The notes beneath the pieces were generated by a model. That model was not told the DNA's origin and made no database searches. It saw only the letters and a list, made by a program, of their open reading frames with translations. The translations under genes and the position numbers were made by a program. Positions 6,922 to 55,469 of a stretch of DNA of 64,000 bases are shown in pieces. The stretch spans positions 222,006-286,005 of the IMG/VR virus record IMGVR_UViG_3300020195_000009; one strand, 5' to 3'. How positions within the stretch are numbered: position 1 is the first letter of the stretch; each line of letters begins with the position of its first letter.

Positions 6922-6957
6922 GTATCTAGGACACCCGAAAGTGGGTCTGATTCAACC
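6922..6957 (-). promoter_or_regulatory. class I promoter, leaderless
   Basis: GGTTGAATC-N14-GTGTC-N8-ATG(6921). Confidence 0.75.
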
Positions 6958-7322
6958 AAAATAGACAACTAGGGCTTCTTTTCGAGAGGCCGCTCTGTAG
7001 GTGTAGGGGCACCCTTGTAGAGCCCTGCGCCGGGGGGCAGTCTCTTTTTGATAGCCGGGGGCGGATCACTCTTCACACGATCGATAAACGCCTTCGTAAC
7101 TTCGAGGATCTGCCTAGCCTCCTCGGTGACCGCCTGAATTTGACCCGACTCACGCCGGAAGAGTTTCGGAGCCGTATCGCTCACGGCGTTTGGTTTGACC
7201 TCTTCAGTCCCACCTTCTTGAATTTGGTCAGGTTTGAGCATAAAGAGCCTCGGTGCTGTTCCGCCCATGGTGCTCCTCCTTACCTAACAGGATCGTTCGA
7301 TAAGTCAAAATGAGGGCACCTT

Positions 7323-7838
7323 TCAACGGGATGGTTTGATCAAACCTAGCGCAGATTGAAGCCCTTGAAGCAAACCCCGAACCTCAGCCATTGTATTTTT
7401 GACCTGAGCAATCTCCTCGGCTCGCTGACGGTCCGCCTGCTCAAAGTCCTCTTCGGGGACACACCTCTTGATCTTGCTTTCAAGCCTTTCGTGGCACTCC
7501 TCGATGTCTTTGAACTGACCCTCCAGCTTACGAAGGCGCTCTTCAAAACCAACGCTCTCCAAGTTGGTGAACGAGCCGGGTCTCCGACGTGGCCAGCTCT
7601 CATCCCCCTGCTGTTCTCGCTGGTAGTGCTCACGAACACTCTTGAGCCCCTCCTCCATGAGGTGAATGGAGTACACGAGGCCTGTCTTGCTATCGATTGA
7701 GCCGATCTTCTTCTCCAGCTCTTCCACTCGCTTTTTGATATCGCGGAAAAAGGCGAGGATCGTAGAAAGAGCCGTACCGCCACCTGAGATGACCGCAGGT
7801 ACAACACTCTCTAGGAGGTGGTCGAGAGAGAAAGCCAT
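7323..7838 (-). CDS. N-terminal hydrophobic segment plus coiled-coil protein (possible lysis-associated membrane protein)
   Basis: Hydrophobic residues ~10-30, then heptad-rich coil; GGAGG RBS. Confidence 0.5.
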   Translation of the reverse strand: MAFSLDHLLESVVPAVISGGGTALSTILAFFRDIKKRVEELEKKIGSIDSKTGLVYSIHLMEEGLKSVREHYQREQQGDESWPRRRPGSFTNLESVGFEERLRKLEGQFKDIEECHERLESKIKRCVPEEDFEQADRQRAEEIAQVKNTMAEVRGLLQGLQSALGLIKPSR

Positions 7839-7942
7839 GATCCTCCGGTTGGACCTTCCAGAAGGCCTAATCTAGCCAAACCATAAGGCAAAAACCGTGG
7901 TAGGTGAGAAGGGGCCCTTGTCTAAAGGTAACCCATAAATTG

Positions 7943-7980
7943 AAAAAGGCCGGCAGGAGTTTTGAACCCCTGCCGGCCTC
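7943..7980 (-). terminator. intrinsic terminator
   Basis: AGGCCGGCAGG/CCTGCCGGCCT stem followed by a T run on the minus strand, downstream of the TROVE remnant. Confidence 0.7.
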
Positions 7981-8001
7981 TTGACGTGTTGGAAGGTCTA
8001 C

Positions 8002-8495
8002 TTACAGTTCGACCTTCTCGATTACATCGACCCAGTGGTCCTTCGTGGCACCCTTGGTGAAGGCCGACACAACCTCGAACACGGTGTCCGAGAAACCACC
8101 CACGTTGAGAATGTTACCGTCCTGATCAGGGACCTGAACGGTACTGTGTGGCGTCAAGTCGATGCAGACCAACTTGGCGTTGGGGCAGCGGCGCTTGAGG
8201 ATGAGCCACTGCTCCATCATCGCCGTTCCACGACCCCCGGCCCCAATAGGGTGCGCCCAGGACTCGTAGTCGGAGACGAAAACCACGAGGTCTACATGAG
8301 CCCGCTCCGCATTGAGAGCCCGGAGCGGCGCATCGCAGTTCGTGGCCCCACCCCGGAACGAAGCGAGCCTCGTAGGCCTCCACACGAGCCGGCAGGTTGC
8401 CTTCGATCGGGAAGACCTCCTCCCCGAACTTCGCCGCCGTCTTCCCAATGAGGTAGGCGTGAAGAGCCGAACGAACCTTGGTCTTGAGGTTGGGG
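8002..8495 (-). pseudogene. Ro60/TROVE-VWA remnant with internal deletions
   Basis: C-terminal GGATNC..L..VDLVVFVSD.ESW..AKLVCIDL..ILNVGGFSD.VF typical of bacterial Ro60; out-of-frame upstream fragment ALHAYLIGK..LPARVEAYEA resembles mid-TROVE. Confidence 0.7.
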
Positions 8496-8518
8496 GTTAG
8501 TTACATCATAAGGACGAA

Positions 8519-9232
8519 CTAGGCACGCTTTTTCTGACGGCGGCTCGTCCGAGAGGCCACATAGGCCTTCGCAACCCTCTTGAATTTCGGGAACTTCGCC
8601 CCGAAGAGTGAATGTTCTTTCCCAGCCGTCCTGTAGATCGTGTACCCACCCTTCGCGATCGTGAAGGGTTTCTTGAGGACACTCATCTGGTCGAACCGTC
8701 GAAGCGAGTCAGACCCAGGGTCGTTCGAGTCGAACCACTCGGGGAAGAGGAAGTTCGACACGGACACGCTCTTCTTTCCGACCTTGATCGGGTAGGCGTC
8801 CCCCTCGACAGCATCGCAAAGCTCCCAAGCGTGGCTCTTGCCATCCGGGGCATCCCCCCACTTGTTGCAGTTGGGGTCACCCCAAAGCTCCAGGATCTCG
8901 TGGGAGAGGACACAAGAGAGAGAGTTGGGCCCTTCAAACTTGGTGCCTCCGTTGTCGAGGATGACGCCCACGAAGACCTTGCCGTACTCCCTCCCCTCAG
9001 GATCCTCGAAATGGTACCCAAGAGCATCCGCCTCATCCGCTTCGTCAAAGAAGTAGATAGGGCACGCCTCATCCGGCACCTGCCGTGGGTCCTCGTAGAA
9101 GATGACCGGGGCTACCCTAGCATCCCAGGCCGGGGCAGCATGCCGACGCATCTGAGAGGCACACGCCTTCGTCATCAGTAGAACTTCGTCGTTCGTGACC
9201 CTTTTGGACTTGTTTACGATGGCGATGAGCAT
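8519..9232 (-). CDS. putative zincin-like metalloprotease
   Basis: ALGYH, SHEILE, ELCDAVE and VSNFLFPEWF motifs; GGAGG RBS. Confidence 0.55.
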   Translation of the reverse strand: MLIAIVNKSKRVTNDEVLLMTKACASQMRRHAAPAWDARVAPVIFYEDPRQVPDEACPIYFFDEADEADALGYHFEDPEGREYGKVFVGVILDNGGTKFEGPNSLSCVLSHEILELWGDPNCNKWGDAPDGKSHAWELCDAVEGDAYPIKVGKKSVSVSNFLFPEWFDSNDPGSDSLRRFDQMSVLKKPFTIAKGGYTIYRTAGKEHSLFGAKFPKFKRVAKAYVASRTSRRQKKRA

Positions 9233-9266
9233 GCTGGCCTCCGTGGAAGCCAGCGAACAAGTAGGA

Positions 9267-9563
9267 TCACACTGCTACGAAGCTGGGACCCCGGTAGGTC
9301 GCCAGGACTGCACCCGTCTGCTGATCCTTGATGAAAGCCGAGAAGACAACCTGCACCCCGAGGTGCTCATTGCAACCACCCGACTTCGAGGAAGCCTCGA
9401 AGTGCTCGATGTACGCCTTGAGGTTCTCCTCAGTCGGCTTCCCATGTGCCGGGATCTGCCCCTGCTTGCGGGTCCGCCACTCAGCGGGGGTACAACGGGC
9501 CGTCCCGTTGTACCCCGTGATCGTCATCTCCACCGTGACCGGAATCATTCGGCTGCGTCCCAT
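9267..9563 (-). CDS. hypothetical phage protein (leaderless)
   Basis: ATG at +1 of class I promoter. Confidence 0.65.
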   Translation of the reverse strand: MGRSRMIPVTVEMTITGYNGTARCTPAEWRTRKQGQIPAHGKPTEENLKAYIEHFEASSKSGGCNEHLGVQVVFSAFIKDQQTGAVLATYRGPSFVAV

Positions 9564-9599
9564 ACTGAGAGAACACGCAGCTCCCCTCTGGATTCAACT
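9564..9599 (-). promoter_or_regulatory. class I promoter, leaderless
   Basis: AGTTGAATC-N14-GTGTT-N8-ATG(9563). Confidence 0.75.
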
Positions 9600-9608
9600 T
9601 TAATCGTC

Positions 9609-10406
9609 TCATGGGATGAGATATTTGACCCAACCCGAATCCGTACGCTCAGCCAGCCCGAGCGTGATGAAAACCTCGTCCATCTTCAACTCTTGTGCGT
9701 AGAAGAAGCTGTATTTCTTCTTGCTCATCTCGACGTACAGTGTCCTGGCCTCCGTCTTGTCACCCGTCGCCGCCAAGGTGATGAACTTGTCCGCAAAGTC
9801 CTTCTTGATGGCCTCACGCTTGGCCGACAAGGCAGCCTGCTTCGCTTTGGTGGCCGCCACCTTATCGGCCTTTACCTGACGGGCTGCGGCCCGCTCAGCA
9901 GCTCGTACGTCCTTGGCCGCCTTCTCCTCGGCCATACGCTCCTCGATGGTGCGAATGGGGGCGAGTTTCCAAGCCAAGATACGATTCACCAGGCGGAGAA
10001 CTTCGGCCGTGAGCTGGCGAACCATGTACTTGACTTCGTGGGTGGCGCTCTCAAGCTGACGGGTCCAGGTCCAAAGCTCAGTAACGCCGCAGATGTACTC
10101 CGTGGTCTCGATGCTGTAGAAGGAGGCCTTCGACACCGAGAGGTGGGTCACGGCACCGGGGGTCTGGAGCTGAGTAAGGCGCTCCTGCTTGTGTACCAGC
10201 TCCTCTTCGACACTGACCAGATACGACCTCACCAGCTCGCAGGAAACCTCGTAGGGGTCCGCCTTGACGCCGTAGCAGTCACCGACGATCTCCCCGTGAC
10301 CCGGCCTCTTGTAGCCGTGGTGGACAAGCTTACCGTCGTGGAGCTTCTGCTCCTGCTCGCAAATCTGGCAGCAACCGAGGAACCGAGTCTTGAGGTTGGC
10401 GTCCAT
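9609..10406 (-). CDS. hypothetical protein with N-terminal CxxC/HHG..C putative zinc site
   Basis: CQIC..LVHHGY..GDC; ATG at +1 of class I promoter. Confidence 0.65.
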   Translation of the reverse strand: MDANLKTRFLGCCQICEQEQKLHDGKLVHHGYKRPGHGEIVGDCYGVKADPYEVSCELVRSYLVSVEEELVHKQERLTQLQTPGAVTHLSVSKASFYSIETTEYICGVTELWTWTRQLESATHEVKYMVRQLTAEVLRLVNRILAWKLAPIRTIEERMAEEKAAKDVRAAERAAARQVKADKVAATKAKQAALSAKREAIKKDFADKFITLAATGDKTEARTLYVEMSKKKYSFFYAQELKMDEVFITLGLAERTDSGWVKYLIP

Positions 10407-10442
10407 ACTGGAGGAACACAGGAGGAGGCCAAGGATTCAACC
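10407..10442 (-). promoter_or_regulatory. class I promoter, leaderless
   Basis: GGTTGAATC-N14-GTGTT-N8-ATG(10406). Confidence 0.75.
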
Positions 10443-10499: not shown

Positions 10500-10532
10500 G
10501 AGAGGGTTGATTCTGAGACCCCCTCCCGTGTT
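10500..10532 (+). repeat. 33-bp perfect direct repeat, copy 1 (class I promoter)
   Basis: GAGAGGGTTGATTCTGAGACCCCCTCCCGTGTT identical to 11983-12015. Confidence 0.9.
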
Positions 10533-10624
10533 TACCTAGCAACGAAGCTCTACTCGAAATCGCTACGGAACCTGTCAGATTCGGCAAGTCGGTGGCGTCC
10601 AACGGTGTACTAGGAGAGACCCCC

Positions 10625-11971
10625 ATGGCGAAGATTCAGCTCACGATCAAGACCGACTACCTCCCCAAGTGGGGCGCCTATGAGGGTGTGAGGGAGTTGG
10701 TCCAGAACGCCAAAGATGCCGAAGTCGAGCATTCGGCGCCCATGACCATCGACTGGTACAACGATACGCTCCGTATCGAGAACGAGGGGACGACGTTGCC
10801 TCTCAAGGCTCTCCTCCTGGGCCACACGACCAAGCTCGGGAACTCCGAGATGATCGGCAAGTTCGGAGAGGGTCTCAAGCTCGGGGTCCTGGCTCTCGTT
10901 CGAGCCGGCCACGATGTCAAGATTCGTAACGGTGAGGAGGTCTGGATCCCCACCATCGAGCGTGACGATCGCTTCGATGATAACGTCCTCACATTCAAGA
11001 TCGAAGGGGGCCGGGAGCAGCGAAACCGCGTCCGTATCGAGATCGGCGGCATCTCGAAAGAGGCTTGGGCAAAGATGAAGGATTGCTTCCTGTTCATCAA
11101 CAAGCCGAAGAAGAACGACTCGATCACGACCTACAATGGGTCGCTTCTCCTCGGTCCCGACTTCAAGGGTCGGATCTACGTGAAGGGCATCTTCGTCCAG
11201 ACCGACCCGGACGCCGCATTCGGCTACGATCTCAAGGAGGTCGAGCTGGACCGTGATCGCAAGATGGTCGAGTCGTGGAACCTCAAGTACCACACCCGCA
11301 AGGTCTTCCTAACCGCGATGAACAAGAAGGAAGAGCTGTTTGCACAGTTCACGGAGATGTTGACCACTCCGACGACGGAGACCGAGAGCATGGACGCCAG
11401 CTCGGTTACCTACGACATCACGAAGGAAGTCGCCGACAAGGTGGCCGACCATTTCCGCAAGGTCCACGGGCCGGACGCTGTCCCGGTCGCCAGCCTTGCA
11501 GACAGCAAGGACATCGAGCACTTCGGTAAGAAGGGGATCGTTGTCTCCAAGCCCCTCGGGGCCGTCCTCGCCAAGTCCCTCGGTGATGCCCTCACCGTCA
11601 AGGAGAACCTCAAGAAGGAGACCCTCAAACTCTATAGCTGGAGCGACCTTACCGAGATCGAACAGTCGGTCATCACAGGCGCCGTCGCCATGATCAACGA
11701 AGTCGAAACCTTCCGGTTGGACGACATCGACGTCGTGGACTTCCGCTCGGTTACGATGGACGGCCAGTTCAAGGACAGCCGAGTCCTCATCGCCAAGAAG
11801 CACTTGGCCAGCGCTGACGAGACCCTCAAGGTTCTTGTCCACGAAGTCGCACATCGCCTCGGGTCCGATGGCTCCAAGAGTCACGTCCAGGCCATCGAGG
11901 AGCTTTGGACGGGGATCGTCCGTAACCTCAGGAATCACCTGGGGGATCGGCTGTCTCGAATCGCCAACTGA
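10625..11971 (+). CDS. GHKL (Hsp90/MORC-like) ATPase fused to a C-terminal HExxH metallopeptidase-like domain
   Basis: RELVQNAKDA (N box), GKFGEGLK (G box), VLVHEVAH; GGAGA RBS. Confidence 0.75.
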   Translation: MAKIQLTIKTDYLPKWGAYEGVRELVQNAKDAEVEHSAPMTIDWYNDTLRIENEGTTLPLKALLLGHTTKLGNSEMIGKFGEGLKLGVLALVRAGHDVKIRNGEEVWIPTIERDDRFDDNVLTFKIEGGREQRNRVRIEIGGISKEAWAKMKDCFLFINKPKKNDSITTYNGSLLLGPDFKGRIYVKGIFVQTDPDAAFGYDLKEVELDRDRKMVESWNLKYHTRKVFLTAMNKKEELFAQFTEMLTTPTTETESMDASSVTYDITKEVADKVADHFRKVHGPDAVPVASLADSKDIEHFGKKGIVVSKPLGAVLAKSLGDALTVKENLKKETLKLYSWSDLTEIEQSVITGAVAMINEVETFRLDDIDVVDFRSVTMDGQFKDSRVLIAKKHLASADETLKVLVHEVAHRLGSDGSKSHVQAIEELWTGIVRNLRNHLGDRLSRIAN

Positions 11972-11982: not shown

Positions 11983-12023
11983 GAGAGGGTTGATTCTGAG
12001 ACCCCCTCCCGTGTTCCCTCAAC
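11983..12023 (+). promoter_or_regulatory. class I promoter / 33-bp repeat copy 2, leaderless
   Basis: GGTTGATTC-N14-GTGTT-N8-ATG(12024). Confidence 0.8.
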
Positions 12024-12236
12024 ATGGACACCCAGACGATGATCACGCGCAACCAGGACGGCTCGCTCCCCCTCGTGCGACTCTCGCCCGAGACTTCGGG
12101 CGACTGCCCTTGCGGGTGCGGCGACGCCGCCTTCGCCTTCGGTATGGACGGCTTCGACGGCTACGTGGATGCGGCTCCCGCGTGCGCGCAGGACGCCGGG
12201 GAAGAGGCGCTCTTGTCCTCGGTGGAGTTCCCGTGA
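12024..12236 (+). CDS. small Cys-containing hypothetical protein
   Basis: ATG at +1; CPCGC motif. Confidence 0.55.
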   Translation: MDTQTMITRNQDGSLPLVRLSPETSGDCPCGCGDAAFAFGMDGFDGYVDAAPACAQDAGEEALLSSVEFP

Positions 12237-12712: not shown

Positions 12713-12748
12713 GGTTGATTCCCCAAGCCCCTCACGTGTTCTTTCAAC
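12713..12748 (+). promoter_or_regulatory. class I promoter, leaderless
   Basis: GGTTGATTC-N14-GTGTT-N8-ATG(12749). Confidence 0.8.
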
Positions 12749-13099
12749 ATGAGTCACCGAACCTCCAGTGTCAGTATCACCTTCCACGTTGAACGAGACG
12801 GGGTAGAGGTCGATCTTCGGATTGCCGGTCGGTACACCCCCGGCCTTGAAGGACGGACCTTCGGCCCCCCCGAGAACTGCTACCCCTCGGAGCCCGCTGA
12901 GGCCGAGATTGAGGCCCTCTGGATGGGTGGCCACCCTTGGGCCGGTACGCTGACGGACGAGGAAGAGGAAGCCGTCATCGAGGCCCTCATCGCTTCGGCT
13001 GAGGAGTCCATCTCGGACGGCCCGGACCCGGACGACGACTACGACTCACGGTGCGACCGTGATGACGACTACCGCGAAGACTCCCGAGAGGACTACTGA
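12749..13099 (+). CDS. acidic phage hypothetical protein
   Basis: GPPENCYP motif, D/E-rich tail; ATG at +1. Confidence 0.6.
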   Translation: MSHRTSSVSITFHVERDGVEVDLRIAGRYTPGLEGRTFGPPENCYPSEPAEAEIEALWMGGHPWAGTLTDEEEEAVIEALIASAEESISDGPDPDDDYDSRCDRDDDYREDSREDY

Positions 13100-13100
13100 G

Positions 13101-17957: not shown

Positions 17958-18047
17958 GTGCTGCCTAGGGCTGCCTAGGGTCTACACCGCGAAATGTCAC
18001 GGGTGGTGACTAAGGGTTTCCCTTATGGGGTGGTGTACACCAACCCG

Positions 18048-19070
18048 ATGCGTATTGAGATCCCTACCCCCGATGACCTCCACGTCCATCTTAGACAAGA
18101 CTGGATGCTGGAGCACACGGTCGAACAATCCGCCCTCCACTTCGGCCGGGCTCTCGTAATGCCCAACCTCACCCCACCTGTCAAGACGGGGGCGGATGTC
18201 GAGAAGTACCGTTCGGACATCCTCGCTTGGAGACGATTCAGCAAGAAGCCGTTCGAGCCTCTCATGACGATCAAGCTCATGCCGGACACAACGCCGGAAA
18301 TCATCAAAGAGGCCTTTACTGCTGGGGCAGTCGCGGGCAAATTGTATCCCGAAGGCGTCACCACAAACTCTGAGGACGGGATCTCGTTCCAAGGCATCTA
18401 CGAGATGAACGCAGTCTTCAAGGCGATGGAAGACGTAGGAATGGTACTGAGCCTTCACGGCGAGAAGCCCGGTGCCTTTTGCATGGATCGAGAGGAAGCG
18501 TTCCTCAACACTCTCGGGACTATCGCTCATGCTTTCCCAAAGCTCCGCATCGTTATGGAGCACATCACGCACCAGAATACGGTGAAGACAGTGAAGGCGC
18601 TTCCCACCAACGTAGCGGCAACCATCACGGTTCACCATCTGGTCCTCAGCCTCGATGATGTCATCGGAGGCTCGCTTCAACCCCACAATTTCTGCAAGCC
18701 GATCGCAAAAAGCCCCGAGGACCGAGAAGTCCTTCGTGATGCAGCTATCAGTGGCAACCCCAAGTTCTTCTTGGGGACGGACTCGGCACCCCACCTCAAA
18801 GAGAAGAAAGAGTCCGCCTCCGGGTGTTCGGGGGTCTACACGGCACCGATAGCGATGCCCATCCTTGCTCACATCTTCGAGGAAATGGAAGCTCTCGACA
18901 AACTAGCCAACTTCACCTCGAAGTTCGGTGCTGACTTCTACGGGCTGCCCGCTCCGAAAGGGACTCTCGTTCTTGAAAAGGGCGAGCCCTGGGAGATTCC
19001 AAAGAGCTACCACGATGTTGTACCCCTTTGGGCGGGACGTTCAATCGAGTGGAGAGCCGAGCGTCTGTAA
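18048..19070 (+). CDS. pyrC: dihydroorotase (E. coli-type)
   Basis: PDDLHVHLR, VMPNL.PP, KLYPEG.TTNS, LHGE, EHIT, FCKPIAK, FLGTDSAPH. Confidence 0.92.
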   Translation: MRIEIPTPDDLHVHLRQDWMLEHTVEQSALHFGRALVMPNLTPPVKTGADVEKYRSDILAWRRFSKKPFEPLMTIKLMPDTTPEIIKEAFTAGAVAGKLYPEGVTTNSEDGISFQGIYEMNAVFKAMEDVGMVLSLHGEKPGAFCMDREEAFLNTLGTIAHAFPKLRIVMEHITHQNTVKTVKALPTNVAATITVHHLVLSLDDVIGGSLQPHNFCKPIAKSPEDREVLRDAAISGNPKFFLGTDSAPHLKEKKESASGCSGVYTAPIAMPILAHIFEEMEALDKLANFTSKFGADFYGLPAPKGTLVLEKGEPWEIPKSYHDVVPLWAGRSIEWRAERL

Positions 19071-20768: not shown

Positions 20769-20781
20769 CGTCGTGCCTCCT

Positions 20782-20817
20782 GTTGAGAGGACACGCGAGA
20801 GGGGTCAGGGTTCAACC
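20782..20817 (-). promoter_or_regulatory. class I promoter, short SD leader
   Basis: GGTTGAACC-N14-GTGTC-N8-AGGAGG..ATG(20768). Confidence 0.7.
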
Positions 20818-21260: not shown

Positions 21261-21354
21261 GTTGGCCTTCAGTTTAGGTTGTATTTTGAAGTTGTCCTAA
21301 CTTTTCCACAACCTCACGAAACCCGTAGTAAAACTCGGTGTAATTGAGTTAGGC

Positions 21355-22459: not shown

Positions 22460-22488
22460 TTCCCCAACCCCTCAAGTGTTCCTCAAAC
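22454..22488 (+). promoter_or_regulatory. class I promoter, leaderless; its TGA is the macro gene stop
   Basis: GGTTGATTC-N13-GTGTT-N8-ATG(22489). Confidence 0.8.
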
Positions 22489-26662: not shown

Positions 26663-26733
26663 GTTTAACACTACACCTGGACGGTAACCGTTCTATGGTG
26701 TACTTAGCATAAAGGAAGTCCGTTGGAAAAACC

Positions 26734-35877: not shown

Positions 35878-35913
35878 GGTTGAATCTCAAACACCCTTCC
35901 GTGTTGACGGTCA
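35878..35913 (+). promoter_or_regulatory. class I promoter, leadered
   Basis: GGTTGAATC-N14-GTGTT-N8-A..AGGAG..ATG(35939). Confidence 0.7.
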
Positions 35914-40879: not shown

Positions 40880-41690
40880 CGAACATCCTTGGGCACGAAC
40901 CCAGCCGCCAGTAGCGCTGTCTCTAGATCGGCGGAGAACTCAGCATCAACCGAACGCCTACGCTGGGCGTACCCCCAAAGCAAGTCTTGAGCGGTTGCGT
41001 CTTTTACGCTCAAGGGAACCTTCCCACGAGGGGTCGTGGGATACTTGTCGGACTGGAATTCGCCGTCGATCAGATGAGCGCCCATCCAAAGGTCTACACC
41101 AAGGCTTTTATCATCGTCACACCACGTCGTCCTGGAGCACACGAGCGAGTCGCCCCCACCTACGCTCCTTCGGAGCGTAACCCACCATCGCCTCAAAAGC
41201 CATAAGATTGTAAGCCTTCCGACACTCGGCTCGGGTGCCATAAGCCCTCCCCAAGCAGATGTCCCTGGCGTCTACCGCAACGAAAGCCAAACCAAGACTC
41301 CTCACCCGGATCCACCGGCTCGACGAGAAGGTAACTGTCGGTCTTCTCGACCACGACCCCATACCAACGGTTCTGGACTTGATTTCCGCTCCATGCCAGA
41401 CGGTCCGCCCCAAACTCCACAGGATCGAAGAGGCTGAGCTGTTCGACCATGTAGAAGCAATCGCCCCGAGCCCTAGGCATCCACCGCCGATCGAGACCCC
41501 CCGGTTTCGTCCCGTCCACGTTGATGACGGCCAGCCAGTTCTTCGCTCTTCGCTCCTCCCACACGGGAACCGAGAGGAGAGCGTTGTTCACACAGGGGAG
41601 CTTCAAGAGCCCCGTCTCTACTTTCAGGGCAGTTTCAGACATGGCTTCTAATCTATACACCAGAGAAAAAACGACCAACCTGCTTTTCTT

Positions 41691-41726
41691 GGTTGATTCG
41701 GAACGAGCCTCGGGTGTTCATGGGAC
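41691..41726 (+). promoter_or_regulatory. class I promoter with no ATG at +1
   Basis: GGTTGATTC-N14-GTGTT-N8-A(41727). Confidence 0.7.
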
Positions 41727-41875
41727 AAGAGCAAGGACGGGAAACCCCGGACGCCGATTGGGACCAACTTGACCGTGGTAGGACCCTTGGGCTGATGCAA
41801 AAGAAACGGCACGTACGCCCTCCGTGGCACCCTGTTCCGTCCAGTACCTCTGCTAGCGAGGTAGTCTGACCGTCC
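41727..41875 (+). ncRNA. candidate small structured RNA
   Basis: GGACGG/CCGTCC closing pair, TACCTC-TGCTAGC-GAGGTA hairpin; converges on a minus-strand gene. Confidence 0.4.
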
Positions 41876-44453: not shown

Positions 44454-45224
44454 TCATTCGTCAAACTCCAGGTTGGCGAGAAGGGTATCAAGGTCCCCAC
44501 CCACAGGAGGAGCCTTCGCCTCTTCCACTTTGACGGGGTCGATCATCGGGACCTCTTCCTCCGGGTCCGTAGGGAGAGCCCAGTTGATAGGCGGGATCCA
44601 AGCCCGTGACAACGCCTTGTTGGCTTGCGAGAAAGGCTTGGACCCAAGGAACCCAGACCCACCCATAGGGGACGGGTGGGAAGCCGCAAGGACCGTGTGC
44701 TTGGCCGTGTTGATGAGACCCCCTTTGTCCTGAGCGTGCTTCCCCCAGAGCAGGAAGACCATCGGGGTCTCCCTCTCACTCAAGACAGAGATGACCCGAT
44801 CGGTGAAGGTCTCCCAGCCGGCCCCCTTGTGGGAGTTGGCTGACTTCTGCCGAGCCGTCAAGACCGTATTGAGCAGGAACACTCCCCGCCTCGCCCACGC
44901 TTTCAGGTGCCCATGAGAAACCTGAGCCAACCCAAGGTCGGCCTCCAACTCCTTGTAGATGTTGACCAAGCTAGGAGGGATCTTCACCCCTGATCTCACG
45001 GAAAACGATAGCCCGTGGGCTTGACCCGACCCATGATAAGGATCCTGTCCGAGAATGACACACTTGACCCGATCGAGCGGGGTCTCCTCGAACGCCGTGA
45101 AAACCTCCCCGTTCGGAGGGTAGACCGGGCCGTCCTCTCGCTCGCTCTTTAGGTAGGCAACAAGATTCACAAAGTAGGGCTTCGTGAACTCGTCCTTCAA
45201 CTGGGCTTGCCATGTCCGGTGCAT
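44454..45224 (-). CDS. ung: uracil-DNA glycosylase family 1
   Basis: GQDPYH, AHGLSFSV, PPSLVNI, LLN, HPSP. Confidence 0.95.
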   Translation of the reverse strand: MHRTWQAQLKDEFTKPYFVNLVAYLKSEREDGPVYPPNGEVFTAFEETPLDRVKCVILGQDPYHGSGQAHGLSFSVRSGVKIPPSLVNIYKELEADLGLAQVSHGHLKAWARRGVFLLNTVLTARQKSANSHKGAGWETFTDRVISVLSERETPMVFLLWGKHAQDKGGLINTAKHTVLAASHPSPMGGSGFLGSKPFSQANKALSRAWIPPINWALPTDPEEEVPMIDPVKVEEAKAPPVGGDLDTLLANLEFDE

Positions 45225-45244
45225 CGCCCGGTGTCTTACACCAA

Positions 45245-45873: not shown

Positions 45874-46090
45874 GCAAGCGAAACACCGGGCCTTTTCACT
45901 CGGAACATAGTCTCCCCGGTACACCTTCGTGTGACCACACTCCAGGTGGAGCGTCGTGATCGGTACCATCCACCAGGTGAAACCTCGACCCTTCCCGACG
46001 TGATCTTCCTGGGTTCGGACCTTTTGCTTGATTTTCCGCCACGGGCTCATACGAAGCCCTACACCGAAATTTACGAATTTGAAGACTCGT

Positions 46091-46126
46091 AGTTGAATCT
46101 CAGACCCTCTTCCGTGTTCTTCAACC
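46091..46126 (+). promoter_or_regulatory. class I promoter, leaderless
   Basis: AGTTGAATC-N14-GTGTT-N8-ATG(46127). Confidence 0.8.
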
Positions 46127-46495
46127 ATGAGCCTCCAAGATTACTACCAGATGTTCAACTCGGGTTGCTGGGCGACTTCGGATGTCGAGGAGTGCCTCTG
46201 CCACGGTAACGGTTGGGCGCTCTCCGACGTGGACACGTGGCACAAGTGCCCGGTTCATTTCGCCGGCCAGCTTCACCCGGAGGCTGACGAGCGCTTCGAG
46301 GACGAAGCCGACTACCTGTCGGCTGAGGCGGATTCGATGAAGGCCTTCAAGGACTTCCAGGTCGCTCGGGCGGCTCGTTCGTTCTCTGGTTCGTTCGAGG
46401 ACTTCCAGGCCAAGCGCTACTTCGCTTCGGCTCCTACCCTCCCGGCTCCGGTCGAGACCGCCTCGGACGTGGGCGACGACGAGATCCCCTTCTGA
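46127..46495 (+). CDS. hypothetical protein with SSB-like C-terminal tip DDEIPF
   Basis: Ends GDDEIPF; Cys/His cluster. Confidence 0.6.
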   Translation: MSLQDYYQMFNSGCWATSDVEECLCHGNGWALSDVDTWHKCPVHFAGQLHPEADERFEDEADYLSAEADSMKAFKDFQVARAARSFSGSFEDFQAKRYFASAPTLPAPVETASDVGDDEIPF

Positions 46496-48551: not shown

Positions 48552-48588
48552 GGTTGAATTCCTGACCCCTCTCCCGTGTTCTAGCCTC
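48552..48588 (+). promoter_or_regulatory. class I promoter, leaderless; supplies upstream stop
   Basis: GGTTGAATT-N15-GTGTT-N8-ATG(48589). Confidence 0.75.
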
Positions 48589-48879
48589 ATGCTCGTTCAC
48601 CTCTCCAAAAAGAAGTCTGTCGAAGTCGCCTCCTTCGCAGCCGCCAGCGCGGAAGTCCGAGCCTATTGGAACGATCGTTCCTCGACCACGTTTTACCGAG
48701 ACCCCAAGGCGGGCATCATCGAGGACAGCGGTAAGCCCGTCGCTCACGTGTCCTACAATGGCCGCGTGTGGGAAGGTACTTCCCGCTTCACTCTCGGTAA
48801 CACCGAGATTCAGCTCTGACTCCCAGCTCTCTAAACCCCAAGACCGACAACCATGATCAAGCCCAACAAGACCTAACCC

Positions 48880-49694: not shown

Positions 49695-49730
49695 GGTTGA
49701 ATCCTGACGGACCCACCGTGTTCTTCCAAC
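49695..49730 (+). promoter_or_regulatory. class I promoter, leaderless
   Basis: GGTTGAATC-N14-GTGTT-N8-ATG(49731). Confidence 0.8.
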
Positions 49731-50172
49731 ATGAACCCCGCCGACCTCGTCCAGACCCAAGTTCTCCATCTGACCGTCTCCGAAGCTGAGAACCTCCTTC
49801 GTCGGGTCCGCAACTGCCGGACCTTCATAACATATGGGATCGAGGTCTACACGGTGACGGCGTCCAAGCAGGCCGTCATCAACCCGGTGACCGGCGAAGT
49901 GACGGAAGAGGATGGCGTCAACGTCATGGTCCGAGCTGAGACCGACATGCAGGCTGGCATCGGCAAGGGCTTCCTCTTCGCCGTCTACGAAGGGATCGGC
50001 AAGTGAAAGCGATTCACTACGGCGTCCCCGGAACCAAGCAGGACGGAGCGGCCCTCGTCCCCTACTGCGAGAACGGCTACGCCGCCTTCCAGCGGAACGC
50101 CCTCGTCATCATGAACACCATCCCAGCCATGGTCGACTGCAAACACTGCCTCGCCGGCATGAAGAGGGCCGC

Positions 50173-51987: not shown

Positions 51988-52023
51988 AGTTGAATCCGAG
52001 AGCCCTCCCGTGTTCCTCCAAAC
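51988..52023 (+). promoter_or_regulatory. class I promoter, leaderless
   Basis: AGTTGAATC-N13-GTGTT-N9-ATG(52024). Confidence 0.75.
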
Positions 52024-52062
52024 ATGAAGACCCAAGCTGCTGCCTTCTTTCATCGGATATCC

Positions 52063-52102: not shown

Positions 52103-54096
52103 TCTCTAAGAGCGAGCCCCATGAACGAGTTGGACGAACTACCGAGTCTCCGAATCCTTGCGGTGCAGGTCAAGAAGCATTTTGAGGGGGTGAAGGTGGC
52201 CCGTTCGCTCCCCGACCGCTCCAGCTCGTCCTGGAGAACCTCCCCGTAGACTTCGAGAGCCCTCCGAGCGGCTAGGTCCTTGGCTCTTTTGAGTTTGGCT
52301 TCTGTCACCGAGGACACCTGTTCCAATGGTGGGCTTTGCAGCGCTTGCACCAGGGAGACGGTGGACGTGTCGCCTGGGTTGGGTAGTAGTCCGCGTCGGA
52401 TCATCTCCCACTCAAAAATGTGATACCGAGCTGAGCCCTTTCCGCCCTTCGCAGCGGCCTTCTCGTACGAATCCAAAATCTGCGAATCCGAAGCATGGGC
52501 CGCCCATGTCTTCAGATTCGTTTGACGCGTCGTCACGTGAACGTGCTCCAGCTCTCCAGCGTCTCGTCCCATCTCCAGCCAAGCTTCCCCAGCTCCCCCT
52601 TGTGTGCCTCAGAGAGGTCTTCCGGTCGAGGACCTGTCGCATGAAGTACGTCATGCTGAGCATCGCAGTTCCACGTCACCCCGTCAGGCTTGTACCCGTT
52701 CAAGATAGTGAGCCCTTGGGCTATGTCGTGCTGACTTGCCATCTTGCGCCCCATAGCCAAAAATGAGAGGTTTCCAACCAAACCCACCCCCTCGCTGACA
52801 CCGAGAGTCTAAAGTGACTCACCAAATGAGATCGGAGAGCCAAAAATGAGGGGTTTCCGAGAGCCCTACCTCTTCTTACTCTTTTTCTTCAAAGAGATAC
52901 CGCCCTCTAAGACCCCAGAGCCAAAAATGAGAGGTTTCCGAGCAGGTTCGGCCTCCGCTCGCCTACGACGGACCTCACGGATGAGAGCCAGGACCAGACG
53001 GCCGTTGAGTCGGAGCCCTTCCTTGGACTCTCGAAGACAAGAGATCGGCTTCTTCTAGGTCCCGTGGGTGAGCATCTCCAGTTCTCACGTGGTAAGTCTT
53101 CGGTACCTTCTCAAGGAAGCTTTCTCCTACCTCACCAGGTGAGAGCTTCCTGGCTTCATTCATCACCCCGGCCACAAGAGGCTGCCATGAACGGCCCTCG
53201 CGAAGGACAAGAAGCCCACCCGACGGGCTCATGAGCGTCACTCTGTACTCTTTTGATCCGAAGGGATGGGTCAGCTCCAAGATTCGACCCACCTCGTCTT
53301 CCCAGACTCTCCGGTCAAACGTGTGCCACGACGGAGCGGCGTAGCCGCTCGTCGAGTGAGCGTCTCGGACCCCAGGATACGTCAAGCGCCAAGGCATGGT
53401 CCCTAGTATTCCCCAGGGTTTCGTCCCGACCAATCCAAGTCCATCGTCTGGTCCGCCAAGACCTCGTACCCGAGCCCGGCCCACGAGTGAAGCGTCTCGT
53501 CCCGCAGCCGAAGTTGCTCAGGTCCAGACCCAAACATAACGATGAGCGGCCAGTCTTTCGTAGGAAGACGCCGGACCTTATCGAAGCGGTCCAGACCCGG
53601 AGGGTCTTCTTGCCCTTCCCGAAGCTGTACATGAATCGTCGGGAAGCCCATGCCAGGGAGTACACCGGGGATTACCCCCTTCCCCTCAAAAATGAGCCGG
53701 GCTATGAAATTTAGGTCCGGGCAGGGACAGGGGGTTTAGCTCCTGGGCTCCAAAAATTGACCGGCACCCAAAATTTAAGGTCGGGGCGCTCGGAATCCTC
53801 TCATTTCTTAGGGGTTACCCGTCAAACGGGAGCCTCGCGGGGGTAAGGCTAGGCGCAAGAGCCCTCGTCAGGGGCGTTTGGTCGGAATCCTCTCATTTCT
53901 AGGGCTCGTCAGGTCATTCGTCGGGTGTTACGTCCTATTACCCCTCGGCCGGACCACATGTCCGTGTTAATTCGATACGCCCTTTTTGCCGATTTCCCAT
54001 AGTCAAGGGGAATAATCGAGCGGTTTTTATTTTTACAGGAAATATGTATGCCACCTGACACCCCCTGGTCCTGAGGGGTTTTTGAGGAATCGTGCC

Positions 54097-54132
54097 AGTT
54101 GATTCAGGGCACCCCTGCCGTGTTCTCCAGGG
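54097..54132 (+). promoter_or_regulatory. class I promoter, leaderless, driving the recombinase
   Basis: AGTTGATTC-N14-GTGTT-N8-ATG(54133). Confidence 0.75.
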
Positions 54133-54969
54133 ATGGACCGTGACCTCTCAGGTGCATCGAATGACGCAGAACTCATGCAGCTCTGGTTACAAGGGAGACC
54201 TGAGAGCACCATGAGAGTGTACGAGCCTGTAGCTCAGGCCTTCATGGCCGCTCTCCCCCAAGGCTTGCGAGGGGCAACCGTCAAGGACGTGCTCACCTAC
54301 ATTCAAACACACGTGAAGGGTGAGCCTGCTACCAGGGCTAGGTTGGTGAGCACCATCAAGAGCCTGCTCTCATGGGCCTGGAGGACGGGCTATACAACCG
54401 TCAACGTAGGTAAGGCTATTAGGTGCGTACGGGTGCCCAGTACCCTACACAAGAAGCTGTTAGATGAAGGTCAGATACAAGGGCTATGCCGGGCCGCAAG
54501 CGGCCGTGACCATGCCCTTGTTGTTCTTCTGTACGTGAGCGGTCTTCGTATCAGCGAGGCCTGTGGCCTTCTCGGGTCCGACTTGAGGGGATGTCATGTG
54601 ACGGTCCTTGGTAAGGGCACCAAGACCCGAACCGTCCTGATCCCCCAGGCAGTAGCCGACCTTCTCATGACCCTTACCAAGGGGCACCAGGTTGACCCGA
54701 GTAAGCCGCTCTTCTGTTCCCGGTGGGGGAGGCGCCCCCTGGGCGTCCGGGCCGCTAGGGAGGCTATCTACAAGGCGGCATCAAAGGTCGGCCTGGACGA
54801 CCTGTCGCCTCACTGGCTCCGGCACGCTCATGCGACCCATGCCATGGACCGGGGGGCTCCCCTCCACGTCGTCCAACAGGGCCTTGGTCACGCCTCCGTG
54901 GCAACCACCTCGAAGTACCTCCACGTGAAGCCGAGCGTAGGCGCTTCGCAGTGGCTCGCTCCGGTGTAG
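54133..54969 (+). CDS. XerC/D-like tyrosine recombinase
   Basis: SGLRISE, GKGTKTR, PHWLRH, LGHASVATTSKYLH. Confidence 0.92.
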   Translation: MDRDLSGASNDAELMQLWLQGRPESTMRVYEPVAQAFMAALPQGLRGATVKDVLTYIQTHVKGEPATRARLVSTIKSLLSWAWRTGYTTVNVGKAIRCVRVPSTLHKKLLDEGQIQGLCRAASGRDHALVVLLYVSGLRISEACGLLGSDLRGCHVTVLGKGTKTRTVLIPQAVADLLMTLTKGHQVDPSKPLFCSRWGRRPLGVRAAREAIYKAASKVGLDDLSPHWLRHAHATHAMDRGAPLHVVQQGLGHASVATTSKYLHVKPSVGASQWLAPV

Positions 54970-54993
54970 AGTAGGTAGCTCCTTCGGGAGTAA

Positions 54994-55050
54994 GAAGCCC
55001 GCTGTCGTGACCTTGCCCCCCCGAGTGTCCGCAGCGGGCTTCGCTATTTT
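54994..55050 (+). terminator. terminator-like stem (possibly part of a small RNA)
   Basis: GAAGCCCGCTG/CAGCGGGCTTC followed by TATTTT. Confidence 0.55.
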
Positions 55051-55052
55051 CG

Positions 55053-55087
55053 AGTTGAATCCCGAGCGTCTCAGGTGTTCCTGAAAC
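55053..55087 (+). promoter_or_regulatory. class I promoter firing into the 158-nt element
   Basis: AGTTGAATC-N13-GTGTT-N8-GAAGCGGA(55088). Confidence 0.75.
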
Positions 55088-55245
55088 GAAGCGGACGGTA
55101 GGAAAGCTCTCAGAGAGGCTTGACCGGACGGAGTAGGGACGCTTCGGGGAGATCCGTCCGGGACGCCGGATTCTGAACGGATCTCCCCGAAGCCCGGACT
55201 ACTTCGTCTGGGTCTCTCCCGTTTCGGGAGGGGGCCATCCGCTTC
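55088..55245. ncRNA. 158-nt highly paired four-way-junction element, predicted sense and antisense RNAs
   Basis: Terminal IR GAAGCGGA(C/T)GG; perfect 17-bp helix 55141-57/55177-93; 13-bp helix 55124-36/55199-211. Confidence 0.75.
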
Positions 55246-55280
55246 TTCTGGTAAACACAGAGCTTCGCTCGGAATCAACC
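55246..55280 (-). promoter_or_regulatory. class I promoter firing into the same element from the other end
   Basis: GGTTGATTC-N13-GTGTT-N8-GAAGCGGA(55245). Confidence 0.75.
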
Positions 55281-55434
55281 CAGAAATGAGAGAAATTCGA
55301 GCGTAGCGAGCCTGCCCCAAAGGGTGCCCTTCCTGTAGGGCGCGAAGCTCGAAAACCTCTCATTTCCAGGGCCTTTCCCACGTGGTAGCTAGGCAACCGA
55401 AAACGTGACTTTTCGGATCTAGTGCCCAAAAAGG

Positions 55435-55469
55435 GGTTGAATCCGAGCGTCCTCGGGTGTTCCTAGATC
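55435..55469 (+). promoter_or_regulatory. class I promoter, leaderless
   Basis: GGTTGAATC-N13-GTGTT-N8-ATG(55470). Confidence 0.75.

What the first reader, a model, noticed from the sequence alone, without database searches (positions are those of the whole stretch)
6922..55469. Window-wide leaderless promoter regulon RGTTGAWTC-N13/14-GTGTY-N8-ATG (24 copies)
Seen: 24 copies on both strands with near-fixed geometry. In 17 an ATG begins 8 nt (once 9) after GTGTY with no SD. In 4 a leader starts there (20781 starts directly with AGGAGG), and 3 precede non-coding structures. Inference: a -35/-10 pair unlike sigma70 (no TATAAT), probably for an ECF-type or phage-encoded sigma, producing mostly leaderless mRNAs. 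It corrects ORF starts (22489, 33089, 35246) and reveals sub-60-aa genes (52024, 55470).
Basis: partly seen in the sequence, partly recalled or inferred. Interest (0 to 1): 0.8.

Follow-up and report, generated by a model that had tools for sequence, protein, structure and literature searches.

The report
Phage promoter set for leaderless genes
An uncultured 286-kb phage carries about 25 copies of a two-box, promoter-like signal placed so that most of its transcripts should begin exactly at the start codon, and its whole phage clade uses a second unusual start signal (GGTGTA) in place of ordinary ribosome-binding sites.

Summary
A position-weight scan finds 23 copies of GTTGAWTC-N13-15-GTGTY in the window, against about 1 in shuffles. 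All 23 lie outside gene bodies and all point at a downstream gene or structured RNA. In 17 copies an ORF-opening ATG sits 8 nt (once 9) after GTGTY. The predicted +1 is a purine in 23 of 23.

The window is the last 64 kb of a 286-kb metagenomic huge-phage contig. The motif is confined to one roughly 49-kb accessory-gene arm, plus 2 outliers. It recurs only in this phage and one close relative, where the boxes are kept while the flanks drift.

I read it as a sigma-type bipartite promoter that makes leaderless mRNAs. It has a TTGA-type -35 box, a fixed CCCTC block and a non-canonical -10 box that lacks A at -11. I also found a second, clade-wide element, yyGGTGTA 9-11 nt upstream of ATG, in 31 related huge-phage loci. 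That clade shows no Shine-Dalgarno enrichment.

The reading enzyme is unidentified. No complete sigma factor or RNA polymerase gene was found in the 56% of the genome I could read, only a zinc-ribbon protein with a sigma region 4 domain. No RNA data were available, so transcription start sites are inferred. Verdict: a new variant of a known kind, phage-specific promoter classes.

The parts
6921..6956 (-). class-1 promoter; +1 = ATG 6921 (124-aa gene 6547-6921)
   Evidence: the orthologous site is kept in the relative
9563..9598 (-). class-1 promoter; +1 = ATG 9563 (98 aa)
   Evidence: the public gene call uses this start
10406..10441 (-). class-1 promoter; +1 = ATG 10406 (265 aa); divergent with the 10506 copy
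10506..10541 (+). class-1 promoter with an 84-nt leader toward the 448-aa gene (ATG 10625), which also has its own GGTGTA element at 10604
11989..12024 (+). class-1 promoter; +1 = ATG 12024 (70 aa)
   Evidence: in the relative the spacer and the W position differ while the boxes are kept
12714..12749 (+). class-1 promoter; +1 = ATG 12749 (116 aa), heading the operon with the HATPase-like, AcrVA2-like and ADP-ribosylglycohydrolase genes
20781..20816 (-). class-1 variant (GTTGAACC / GTGTCC); the predicted +1 is the first base of AGGAGG, with ATG at 20768
22455..22489 (+). class-1 promoter; +1 = ATG 22489 (109 aa), first gene of an 8-gene plus-strand unit
   Evidence: the relative has a 15-nt spacer here instead of 13
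32116..32151 (+). class-1 promoter; +1 = ATG 32151 (75 aa)
33055..33089 (+). class-1 promoter; +1 = ATG 33089 (187 aa)
33984..34019 (+). class-1 variant (GTTGAATA / GTGTCC); +1 = ATG 34019 (78 aa)
34670..34705 (+). class-1 promoter; +1 = ATG 34705 (92 aa)
35212..35246 (+). class-1 promoter; +1 = ATG 35246 (101 aa)
35879..35914 (+). class-1 promoter with a 25-nt leader to ATG 35939 (85 aa)
41692..41727 (+). class-1 promoter with no ORF downstream; the transcript would run antisense to minus-strand genes 41883-45224. It is back-to-back with the GGTGTA element at 41661(-).
46092..46127 (+). class-1 promoter; +1 = ATG 46127 (122 aa)
48553..48589 (+). class-1 variant (GTTGAATT, spacer 15); +1 = ATG 48589 (76 aa)
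49696..49731 (+). class-1 promoter; +1 = ATG 49731 (91 aa)
51989..52024 (+). class-1 promoter; ATG 9 nt after GTGTT; the 53-aa ORF has non-coding-like composition, so the product may be an RNA
54098..54133 (+). class-1 promoter; +1 = ATG 54133 (278 aa; the only candidate seen for the window's one Phage_integrase match, but that match was not mapped to a gene)
55054..55088 (+). class-1 promoter; +1 = G 55088, the first base of the structured RNA
55245..55279 (-). class-1 promoter convergent with the 55054 copy; +1 = G 55245, which would transcribe the complement of the same element
55436..55470 (+). class-1 promoter; +1 = ATG 55470 (43-aa ORF)
55088..55245 (.). 158-nt element whose 5' and 3' ends pair, bracketed by two convergent class-1 promoters; no Rfam match
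   Evidence: RNA fold dG -100.7 (z -8.5) on the plus strand for 55088-55250 and -90.4 (z -8.4) on the minus strand for 55088-55245; Rfam shows only sub-threshold noise
10604..10627 (+). class-2 element GGTGTA-N15-ATG (448-aa gene)
18032..18050 (+). class-2 element GGTGTA-N10-ATG (amidohydrolase gene)
21337..21357 (+). class-2 element GGTGTA-N12-ATG (135 aa)
   Evidence: kept in the relative (the end of L002 shows GGTGTA-N12-ATG)
23475..23492 (+). class-2 element GGTGTA-N9-GTG (78 aa)
26660..26677 (-). class-2 element GGTGTA-N9-ATG (receiver-domain protein)
30340..30358 (-). class-2 element GGTGTA-N10-GTG (205 aa)
38144..38162 (-). class-2 element GGTGTA-N10-ATG (84 aa)
41083..41100 (-). class-2 element GGTGTA-N9-ATG
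41640..41661 (-). class-2 element GGTGTA-N13-ATG (149 aa)
45222..45242 (-). class-2 element GGTGTA-N12-ATG heading the minus-strand unit with the UDG-like and PcfJ-like genes
46048..46065 (-). class-2 element GGTGTA-N9-ATG, divergent from the class-1 copy at 46092
53649..53666 (-). class-2 element GGTGTA-N9-ATG (82 aa)
58016..58034 (-). class-2 element GGTGTA-N10-GTG (51 aa)
60859..60880 (+). class-2 element GGTGTA-N13-ATG (91 aa)

Best explanation
The 35-bp unit is a phage-specific promoter.

Anatomy, shown by the sequence:
- GTTGAWTC lies at -35 to -28.
- A spacer of 13-15 nt follows. Its last part is a fixed CCCTC block at about -21 to -17.
- GTGTTC lies at -13 to -8.
- A purine lies 8 nt after GTGTY, and in 17 of 23 copies it is the A of an ORF-opening ATG.

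Mechanism, inferred:
- A sigma-type holoenzyme binds the two boxes. A region-4-type helix reads TTGA. A second module reads GTGTTC, which has G rather than A at -11 and so is not a primary-sigma -10 box.
- Transcription starts at the purine, giving mRNAs with no 5' leader. These would be translated without a Shine-Dalgarno sequence.
- In the other copies the same start point yields an mRNA that begins directly with AGGAGG, two short-leader mRNAs, an antisense RNA, and both strands of a 158-nt structured RNA.

The class is confined to one accessory-gene arm of a 286-kb huge phage, which suggests one temporal or regulatory class. A second, clade-wide element, yyGGTGTA 8-13 nt before start codons with no -35 box, drives replication, tRNA-array and most minus-strand units.

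The factor that reads the class-1 boxes is not identified. I think a phage-encoded or phage-recruited alternative specificity factor is more likely than the host primary sigma.
For: - Enrichment: 23 sites against about 1 in shuffles. GTTGAWTC occurs 25 times against 4.1 expected.
- Position: 23 of 23 sites lie outside gene bodies, although 58% of the window is gene body, which gives P of about 2e-9. All 23 face a downstream ORF or structured RNA.
- Geometry: ATG lies exactly 8 nt (once 9) after GTGTY in 17 of 23 copies, each opening an ORF. The chance of ATG at a fixed position is about 1 in 64 per site. Reading the listed sequences, the predicted +1 is a purine in 23 of 23, including the 6 copies without ATG.
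- The second box almost never occurs without the first.
- Specificity: in IMG/VR and JGI metagenome scans, only this contig has more than one exact match (16 and 10 matches). Every other contig has a single match.
- Regional restriction: 23 of the 25 sites in the 161.5 kb seen lie in contig 228.9-277.4 kb.
- Purifying selection: in 7 orthologous pairs with contig Ga0395805_0001776, the two boxes differ at 3 of 98 positions, two of them at W. The flank, spacer and discriminator differ at 68 of 308. One pair changes its spacer from 13 to 15 nt with the boxes intact.
- No competing canonical signal: sigma-70-type promoters and intrinsic terminators are not enriched.
- Shine-Dalgarno cores are at the chance level: 42 of 195 genes have one (my estimate of the chance rate is about 15%).
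- Independent gene calls use the leaderless ATGs.
- Class 2: GGTGTA is the top hexamer 8-14 nt upstream of ORF-opening ATGs in 31 relatives' loci, 69 against 8.7 expected. Spacings of 9, 10 and 11 nt occur 19, 24 and 18 times. The same method on 47 unrelated phage loci returns Shine-Dalgarno motifs instead.
- A phage gene encodes a zinc-ribbon protein with a sigma region 4.2 helix (LTRERIRQIE) like that of primary sigma factors, which read TTGACA.
Against: - No transcription start site or expression data: no RNA run was listed.
- No complete sigma factor and no RNA polymerase gene was found in the window or in the 56% of the genome I read, so the reading enzyme is hypothetical.
- The relative used for conservation is close (79-96% DNA identity), so the conservation signal rests on few substitutions.
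- The zinc-ribbon sigma-4 protein family is widespread in ordinary phages that use Shine-Dalgarno sequences and lack both motifs. It is therefore not specifically tied to this promoter.
- The host is unknown. The hints are a Lysinibacter-labelled MAG and a Myxococcota homologue.
Confidence: 0.72

Rival explanations
1. The boxes are read by an ECF-type (group 4) sigma factor, phage-encoded or a host stress sigma.
For: - Bipartite geometry with a rigid short spacer.
- CGT or GTT lies inside the second box: CGTGTT in 10 of 23 copies.
- From my own knowledge, actinobacterial SigH/SigR-type promoters are written GGAAT-N16-18-GTT. TGAAT-N16/17-GTT can be read in the copies where W is A.
- One clade relative sits in a MAG labelled as an actinobacterium.
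Against: - The -35 box lacks the AAC core. Half the copies have TGATTC, where W is T.
- No Sigma70_r2 or ECF protein and no anti-sigma gene was found in the 161.5 kb read (plus the Pfam columns).
- The MAG label is only a binning result.
Confidence: 0.2
2. The host's own housekeeping holoenzyme reads these sites as early promoters. The host would belong to a lineage whose promoters differ from the E. coli type.
For: - TTGA is the conserved core of the primary-sigma -35 box in 23 of 23 copies.
- The genes served are small accessory and anti-defence-like genes typical of early regions: AcrVA2-like, ADP-ribosylglycohydrolase and Ku.
- No canonical sigma-70 promoters are present to serve as early promoters.
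Against: - The second box has G at -11 and no TAnnnT. The residues that read A-11 and T-7 are conserved in primary sigma factors of all phyla (established knowledge).
- Exact copies occur in no other contig more than once. Host genomes were not scanned for the motif, because the one genome-contig scan went to a protein query.
Confidence: 0.12
3. A phage-encoded RNA polymerase reads both classes. It could be multisubunit like phiKZ/AR9, or single-subunit, and it could be virion-borne or made early.
For: - The GGTGTA core is short, conserved across the clade and independent of genome GC (49-67%). That argues for a phage-borne specificity.
- AR9 late promoters are likewise a 4-nt element about 7 nt before the start site: AACA-N6-T-A/G (PMC5312081).
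- 124 kb of the genome is unread.
Against: - No polymerase gene was found in the 161.5 kb read.
- The two giant ORFs at about 32-41 kb look like fibre or beta-helix proteins and carry no clear NADFDGD-type motif; the only D-x-D-G-D match is DDDGD.
- A -35 box with TTGA and a spacer that varies by 1-2 nt is typical of sigma-dependent recognition.
- phiKZ and AR9 transcripts have 26-491-nt leaders, and no leaderless transcript was detected in phiKZ (PMC5312081, PMC8244752).
Confidence: 0.15
4. The motifs are RNA-level signals rather than promoters. They would be a non-Shine-Dalgarno ribosome-binding element, or a cleavage signal that trims polycistronic RNA to create leaderless mRNAs.
For: - The clade lacks Shine-Dalgarno enrichment, so some other initiation signal is needed.
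- GGTGTA sits 9-11 nt upstream of ATG, a spacing like that of a ribosome-binding site.
- Several GGTGTA copies lie inside the 3' end of the upstream gene.
Against: - Only about 10-15% of genes carry either motif. These are the first genes of units, after intergenic gaps, after tRNAs, or in divergent pairs.
- Six class-1 copies precede no start codon, yet keep a purine at the same distance.
- Class 1 has a second box 13-15 nt upstream with DNA-type (-35/-10) spacing.
- The complement of GGUGUA is not in the conserved 3' tail of 16S rRNA (established knowledge).
Confidence: 0.08
5. GAWTC in the first box is a methylation-controlled switch. It is a subset of GANTC, the CcrM-type site, and a phage N6-adenine methyltransferase would time promoter activity.
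For: - GAWTC is a palindrome. The A and T forms of W occur about equally, and W flips between orthologues.
- The phage encodes a 539-aa N6_N4_Mtase and a second methyltransferase.
Against: - GANTC sites are neither depleted nor enriched genome-wide.
- N is never G or C in 22 of the 23 sites; the one exception, 20816, has GAACC and no GANTC at all. A pure GANTC requirement would not predict this.
- The target sequence of the methyltransferase is unknown.
Confidence: 0.08

Closest known systems
T4 middle and late promoters (MotA box at -30 plus a -10 box; gp55/gp33-dependent TATAAATA late promoters)
   Same: - A phage reprograms the host polymerase with its own specificity factors.
- One class has an upstream box at about -30 to -35 plus a downstream box. 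Another class has only a short -10-type element.
- The classes map to genome regions or temporal groups.
   Different: - The sequences are unrelated.
- T4 middle promoters keep a sigma-70 -10 box, whereas GTGTTC here lacks A at -11.
- No MotA, AsiA, gp55 or gp33 homologue was found in the part read.
- T4 mRNAs have leaders with Shine-Dalgarno sites.
phiKZ/AR9 jumbo-phage promoters read by phage multisubunit RNA polymerases
   Same: - A jumbo phage with short phage-specific consensus elements unlike sigma-70 promoters.
- Two or more classes, some of them driving antisense RNAs (PMC5312081).
   Different: - The early consensus there is a long AT-rich block (AAATATATATTAT-N6-G). The late consensus is AACA-N6-TA/G or TATG.
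- 5' UTRs are 26-491 nt in AR9, and no leaderless transcript was seen in phiKZ (PMC5312081, PMC8244752).
- Here the motif is GC-rich and bipartite with a TTGA box and mostly leaderless geometry, and no polymerase genes were found so far.
Leaderless-gene promoters of Actinobacteria and Deinococcus (TANNNT about 6-7 nt before the start codon)
   Same: - The -10-type box sits at a fixed short distance from the ATG, so that +1 is the A of ATG, with no Shine-Dalgarno sequence.
- In class 2, the TA of GGTGTA falls at -12/-11 when the spacing is 10, with a weak T at -7 (38%).
   Different: - Class 1 has G at -11.
- The invariant part of class 2 is GGTG-TA rather than TANNNT.
- Internal genes of this clade also lack Shine-Dalgarno sites, unlike actinobacterial genomes (my own knowledge).
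ECF (group 4) sigma promoters, e.g. GGAAC/T-N16-18-(C)GTT
   Same: A rigid bipartite architecture, with GTT or CGT in the downstream box.
   Different: - There is no AAC core, and W may be T.
- No cognate sigma or anti-sigma gene pair was found.

Membership tests
Primary sigma (sigma-70 / group 1) promoter | -35 hexamer resembling TTGACA | tested here: met
   TTGA is present in 23 of 23 copies, and TTGAWT in 22 of 23; the exception is 20816, which has TTGAAC.
Primary sigma (sigma-70 / group 1) promoter | -10 hexamer TAnnnT with A at -11 and T at -7, 16-18 bp from the -35 box | tested here: not met
   With +1 at the ATG, positions -12 to -7 read TGTTCY, so G is at -11. The consensus scan finds no enrichment of sigma-70 pairs: 3 against 4.0 and 3 against 4.4 expected.
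ECF (group 4) sigma promoter | -35 box with an AAC core (GGAAC-like) | tested here: not met
   The box is GAATC or GATTC in 20 of the 23 copies. The one variant at 20816 has GAACC.
ECF (group 4) sigma promoter | -10 box with CGT or GTC | tested here: inconclusive
   CGTGTT occurs in 10 of 23 copies. GTT occurs in 20 of the 23; the other three have GTGTCC.
ECF (group 4) sigma promoter | A cognate sigma (Sigma70_r2 plus r4_2), usually with an anti-sigma, encoded by the element or host | tested here: inconclusive
   None was found in the window or in 161.5 of 286 kb (plus the Pfam columns). 124 kb and the host genome are unseen.
T4-type late promoter / gp55-gp33 system | A single -10-type element without a -35 box, plus gp55-like and gp33-like proteins | tested here: not met
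   Class 1 has an obligatory upstream box. No PHROG match to late sigma or accessory proteins was found. Class 2 fits the single-element criterion only.
phiKZ/AR9-type phage RNA polymerase promoters | Split beta/beta' polymerase genes in the phage, with AT-rich early or AACA/TATG late consensus | tested here: inconclusive
   The consensus sequences do not match (PMC5312081). No polymerase gene was found in the 56% of the genome read.
Leaderless mRNA | The primary transcript's 5' end coincides with the start codon | not testable with these tools
   The geometry fits: ATG lies 8 nt after the box in 17 copies, with a purine at +1. No RNA run was listed.
Dispersed repeat / mobile element (REP, MITE) | Whole-length sequence conservation, often palindromic, in either orientation relative to genes | tested here: not met
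   Only the three short blocks are conserved, and spacer length and sequence vary. All 23 copies are oriented toward downstream genes or RNAs.

The most novel reading that the evidence does not exclude
A large clade of uncultured huge phages (230-450 kb, GC 49-67%) may run a gene-expression programme that bypasses both canonical bacterial signals. Transcription would start from a clade-specific yyGGTGTA element read by an as yet unrecognised phage-borne specificity factor or polymerase. Translation would be largely leaderless or Shine-Dalgarno-independent. In this one lineage a -35 add-on (GTTGAWTC plus CCCTC) would create a separately controlled regulon for accessory and anti-defence genes. 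That add-on might be read by the phage's stand-alone zinc-ribbon sigma region 4 protein, acting as one half of a split sigma.
Probability: 0.2. Interest if true: 0.8.

Novelty: new variant of a known kind. Interest (0 to 1): 0.6.

Why it matters
Phage-specific promoter classes are the handles by which large phages time their genes and take over the host. For metagenomic huge phages, essentially nothing is known about transcription signals.

These motifs have three uses:
- They give a sequence-only way to define transcription units, correct start codons, and find small genes and non-coding RNAs in this clade.
- They mark a 49-kb arm, rich in anti-defence-like genes, as a co-regulated set.
- They show that the clade does not rely on Shine-Dalgarno sites, which matters both for gene calling and for host prediction.

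If the reading factor proves to be a new kind of sigma or polymerase specificity subunit, it would also be an orthogonal promoter and factor pair for engineering.

Tried and rejected
- Nucleotide searches of phage GenBank records found nothing. Protein-level hits are only distant, and no cultured relative exists.
- RNA-seq runs: none was listed. The two DNA runs cannot map start sites.
Two look-ups returned only short Logan contigs. Two more failed, one of them because the gene starts with TTG.
- TAG recoding, suggested by the two tRNA-CTA genes, is not evident in the regions read. TAG ends 21 of 107 called genes, and treating TAG as sense does not merge ORFs any better than the other stop codons do.
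- The clade-conserved 203-aa protein that I hoped might be a sigma is an HExxH metalloprotease-like protein.
- The 168-aa gene divergent from the sigma-4 gene has no detectable relatives of known function.
- GANTC counts are unremarkable.
- Upstream T-runs are not terminators in most copies.
- Two literature searches for GGTGTA or similar motifs in phages returned nothing relevant.
- Rfam finds nothing for the RNAs downstream of the three non-coding copies, 41692, 55054 and 55279.

Full report
**What the window is**

An exact-protein look-up places the window at 222,006-286,005 of JGI metagenome contig Ga0163150_10000022, which is IMGVR_UViG_3300020195_000009 (286,005 bp), from a microbial-mat sample. 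The gene content is that of a huge phage:
- In the window: integrase, R2K ATP-grasp, zf_Tbcl, DprA-like, AcrVA2-like and ADP-ribosylglycohydrolase domains.
- Elsewhere on the contig: PolA, DnaB, clamp loader, RNR, RecA, ligase, GroEL, RtcB, ClpX and a tRNA array.

No cultured phage is close. A conserved HExxH protein links the contig to more than 30 uncultured phage contigs, many of them 230-450 kb, with GC from 49 to 67% in the fetched stretches.

**Checking the observation**

GTTGAWTC occurs 25 times against 4.1 expected. Twenty copies carry GTGTY 13-14 nt downstream. A two-block weight-matrix scan gives 23 copies, against about 1 in shuffles. The second box almost never occurs without the first.

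Seventeen copies have an ORF-opening ATG 8 nt (once 9) after GTGTY. The six others keep a purine at that same distance:
- The A that begins AGGAGG at 20781.
- The first base of two leaders, at 10541 and 35914.
- The start of an antisense or non-coding transcript at 41727.
- The two G's that begin the two strands of a 158-nt, very stable structured element at 55088-55245.

All 23 copies lie outside gene bodies, although 58% of the window is gene body. The public gene calls checked, made independently, already use the leaderless ATGs, including that of the Ku gene just upstream of the window.

**Distribution**

I read 161.5 kb of the contig (1-41,535 and 166,018-286,005). In that part there are 25 class-1 sites. 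Twenty-three fall within 228.9-277.4 kb, which is window 6.9-55.5 kb, and 19 are on the plus strand. The two others precede the Ku gene (214.2 kb) and a 108-aa gene in the replication module (16.9 kb).

Exact-pattern scans of IMG/VR and of the JGI metagenome collection find multiple copies only in this contig. Every other contig has one chance match.

**Conservation**

A second contig from another sample (Ga0395805_0001776) is collinear at 79-96% identity. In seven orthologous promoter pairs:
- The two boxes differ at 3 of 98 positions, two of them at the W.
- The upstream flank, spacer and discriminator differ at 68 of 308 positions.
- One pair has changed its spacer from 13 to 15 nt with both boxes intact.

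This is what selection on two protein-contacted boxes predicts. It is not what a dispersed repeat predicts.

**A second class**

K-mer enrichment upstream of called genes turned up yGGTGTA. In the window, 15 copies lie 9-15 nt before a start codon, against 1.3 in shuffles. Most are on the minus strand. In the part of the contig I read there are 33, spread over all regions, and 25 are on the minus strand. No -35 box accompanies them.

In 31 loci from related huge phages, GGTGTA is the most enriched hexamer 8-14 nt upstream of ORF-opening ATGs (69 against 8.7 expected). The spacing is tight: 9, 10 and 11 nt occur 19, 24 and 18 times. AGGAGG is not enriched there.

As a control, the same procedure on 47 unrelated phage loci of similar GC returns AAGGAG and AGGAGG and only 8 GGTGTA cases. 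GGTGTA copies typically follow tRNA genes, hairpins and intergenic gaps, or sit in divergent pairs. They cover about 10-15% of genes. That fits unit starts rather than a per-gene ribosome-binding site.

With a spacing of 10, the TA of GGTGTA falls at -12/-11, and T is mildly enriched at -7 (38%). Class 2 is therefore compatible with a TAnnnT-type recognition extended upstream by GGTG. Class 1 is not, because it has G at -11.

**Mechanism**

The architecture is a TTGA-type box, a spacer that varies by 1-2 nt, a second short box, and a purine start 8 nt later. The best-supported reading is a sigma-dependent promoter that produces mostly leaderless mRNAs.

Canonical sigma-70 pairs and intrinsic terminators are not enriched. 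Shine-Dalgarno cores upstream of genes are at about chance frequency (42 of 195). The whole expression system is thus non-canonical. [quoted passage not shown]

**Who reads the boxes is open**

I found no Sigma70_r2 protein, no gp55/gp33-like protein and no polymerase subunit in the window or in the other 97 kb I read (plus the Pfam columns). 124 kb remain unread.

The only transcription-type protein is a 122-aa zinc-ribbon protein with a sigma region 4 domain (contig 198,403-198,771; Pfam E 6e-9). Its recognition helix matches that of primary sigma factors. It sits between divergent, overlapping GGTGTA elements. It could read TTGA. However, its family is widespread in ordinary phages that lack both motifs, and one homologue sits in a Myxococcota MAG chromosome, so the link is only a lead.

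Host hints are weak. One clade relative is binned in a MAG labelled Lysinibacter sp..

**Comparison with known systems**

The logic resembles T4: a box at -30 plus a -10 box for one class, and a lone -10-type element for another. It also resembles the jumbo phages phiKZ and AR9, which have short phage-specific consensus elements and antisense promoters. The sequences differ, though, and AR9 and phiKZ transcripts carry 26-491-nt leaders, with no leaderless transcript detected in phiKZ (PMC5312081, PMC8244752).

**Verdict**

The promoter and leaderless interpretation is well supported by sequence statistics, position, orientation and comparative conservation, but it lacks RNA evidence. The sigma assignment is unproven. 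I rate it a new variant of a known kind, with moderate to high interest. The interest comes mainly from the clade-wide GGTGTA element and the Shine-Dalgarno-independent design, which make transcription in uncultured huge phages directly testable.

Noticed in passing
window 17880-17957 (-) and 19101-19177 (-): Two tRNA genes with anticodon CTA (amber suppressors) flank the amidohydrolase gene. Rfam tRNA scores are 55.9 and 64.1 bits. TAG still ends 21 of 107 called genes in the window, and I saw no sign of TAG recoding in the regions read. Late genes in the unread part might use it.
   Followed up: partly
window 55088-55245: A 158-nt element with paired 5' and 3' ends (dG about -100 kcal/mol, z -8.5) is bracketed by two convergent class-1 promoters, so both strands could be transcribed. 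It has no Rfam family. The close relative encodes a full 556-aa Ro60-type vWA protein, which raises the idea of a Y-RNA-like partner. I did not test that.
   Followed up: partly
window about 7840-8520 versus L002 4889-6559: The relative carries a 556-aa vWA_Ro60 gene where the window has only a short remnant. One window protein gives a vWA_Ro60 match at E 1.6e-7, but it was not mapped to an ORF. The DNA alignment is broken in this stretch.
   Followed up: no
whole contig and the relatives L087-L118: Shine-Dalgarno motifs are not enriched upstream of genes in this phage or its clade. C at -1 and A at +4 around the ATG are the only general features.
   Followed up: partly
window 41692-41900 (+): The class-1 promoter at 41692 faces no ORF. 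Its transcript would be antisense to the minus-strand unit 41883-45224 (UDG-like, PcfJ-like), which is driven by the GGTGTA element at 45242. This could be antisense control between the two promoter classes.
   Followed up: no
window 21-5591 (+): Three large ORFs (625/651, 578 and 510/551 aa; the last has IPT/TIG domains) have a flat GC1/2/3 profile unlike the other genes, and they have no Pfam or PHROG match apart from TIG.
   Followed up: no
contig 1-41,535 and 166,018-286,005: CTGCAG is absent (0 against 44 expected). GCGC (313 against 986) and CTAG (217 against 534) are depleted. GATC and TCGA are over-represented. This looks like restriction-site avoidance.
   Followed up: no
contig 198,403-198,771 (L088:4044-4412), outside the window: A 122-aa protein has four invariant cysteines (RPCPWVSCKxHL...) followed by a sigma region 4.2 helix-turn-helix identical in its key residues to primary sigma factors. 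The family has at least 74 small homologues with the PF04545 domain only, in many phages and in a Myxococcota MAG chromosome.
   Followed up: partly
window 12749-17649 (+): One class-1-driven unit encodes a HATPase_c_3 (MORC-like) protein, an AcrVA2-like protein and an ADP-ribosylglycohydrolase. That is a plausible counter-defence cluster.
   Followed up: no
window 54133-54969 (+): One window protein matches the tyrosine-recombinase family Phage_integrase (E 5e-30). The match was not mapped to a gene. The 278-aa gene at 54133-54969, expressed from a class-1 promoter as a predicted leaderless mRNA, is my candidate from its size and N-terminal sequence. An integrase would be unusual for a 286-kb phage.
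   Followed up: no
L306 (MAG labelled Lysinibacter sp., contig JBBAQX010000004.1): A 127-kb contig of the same phage clade (58% identity in the conserved protease, with GGTGTA-N9/10-ATG elements) is binned in an actinobacterial MAG. This is the only host hint, and a weak one.
   Followed up: partly
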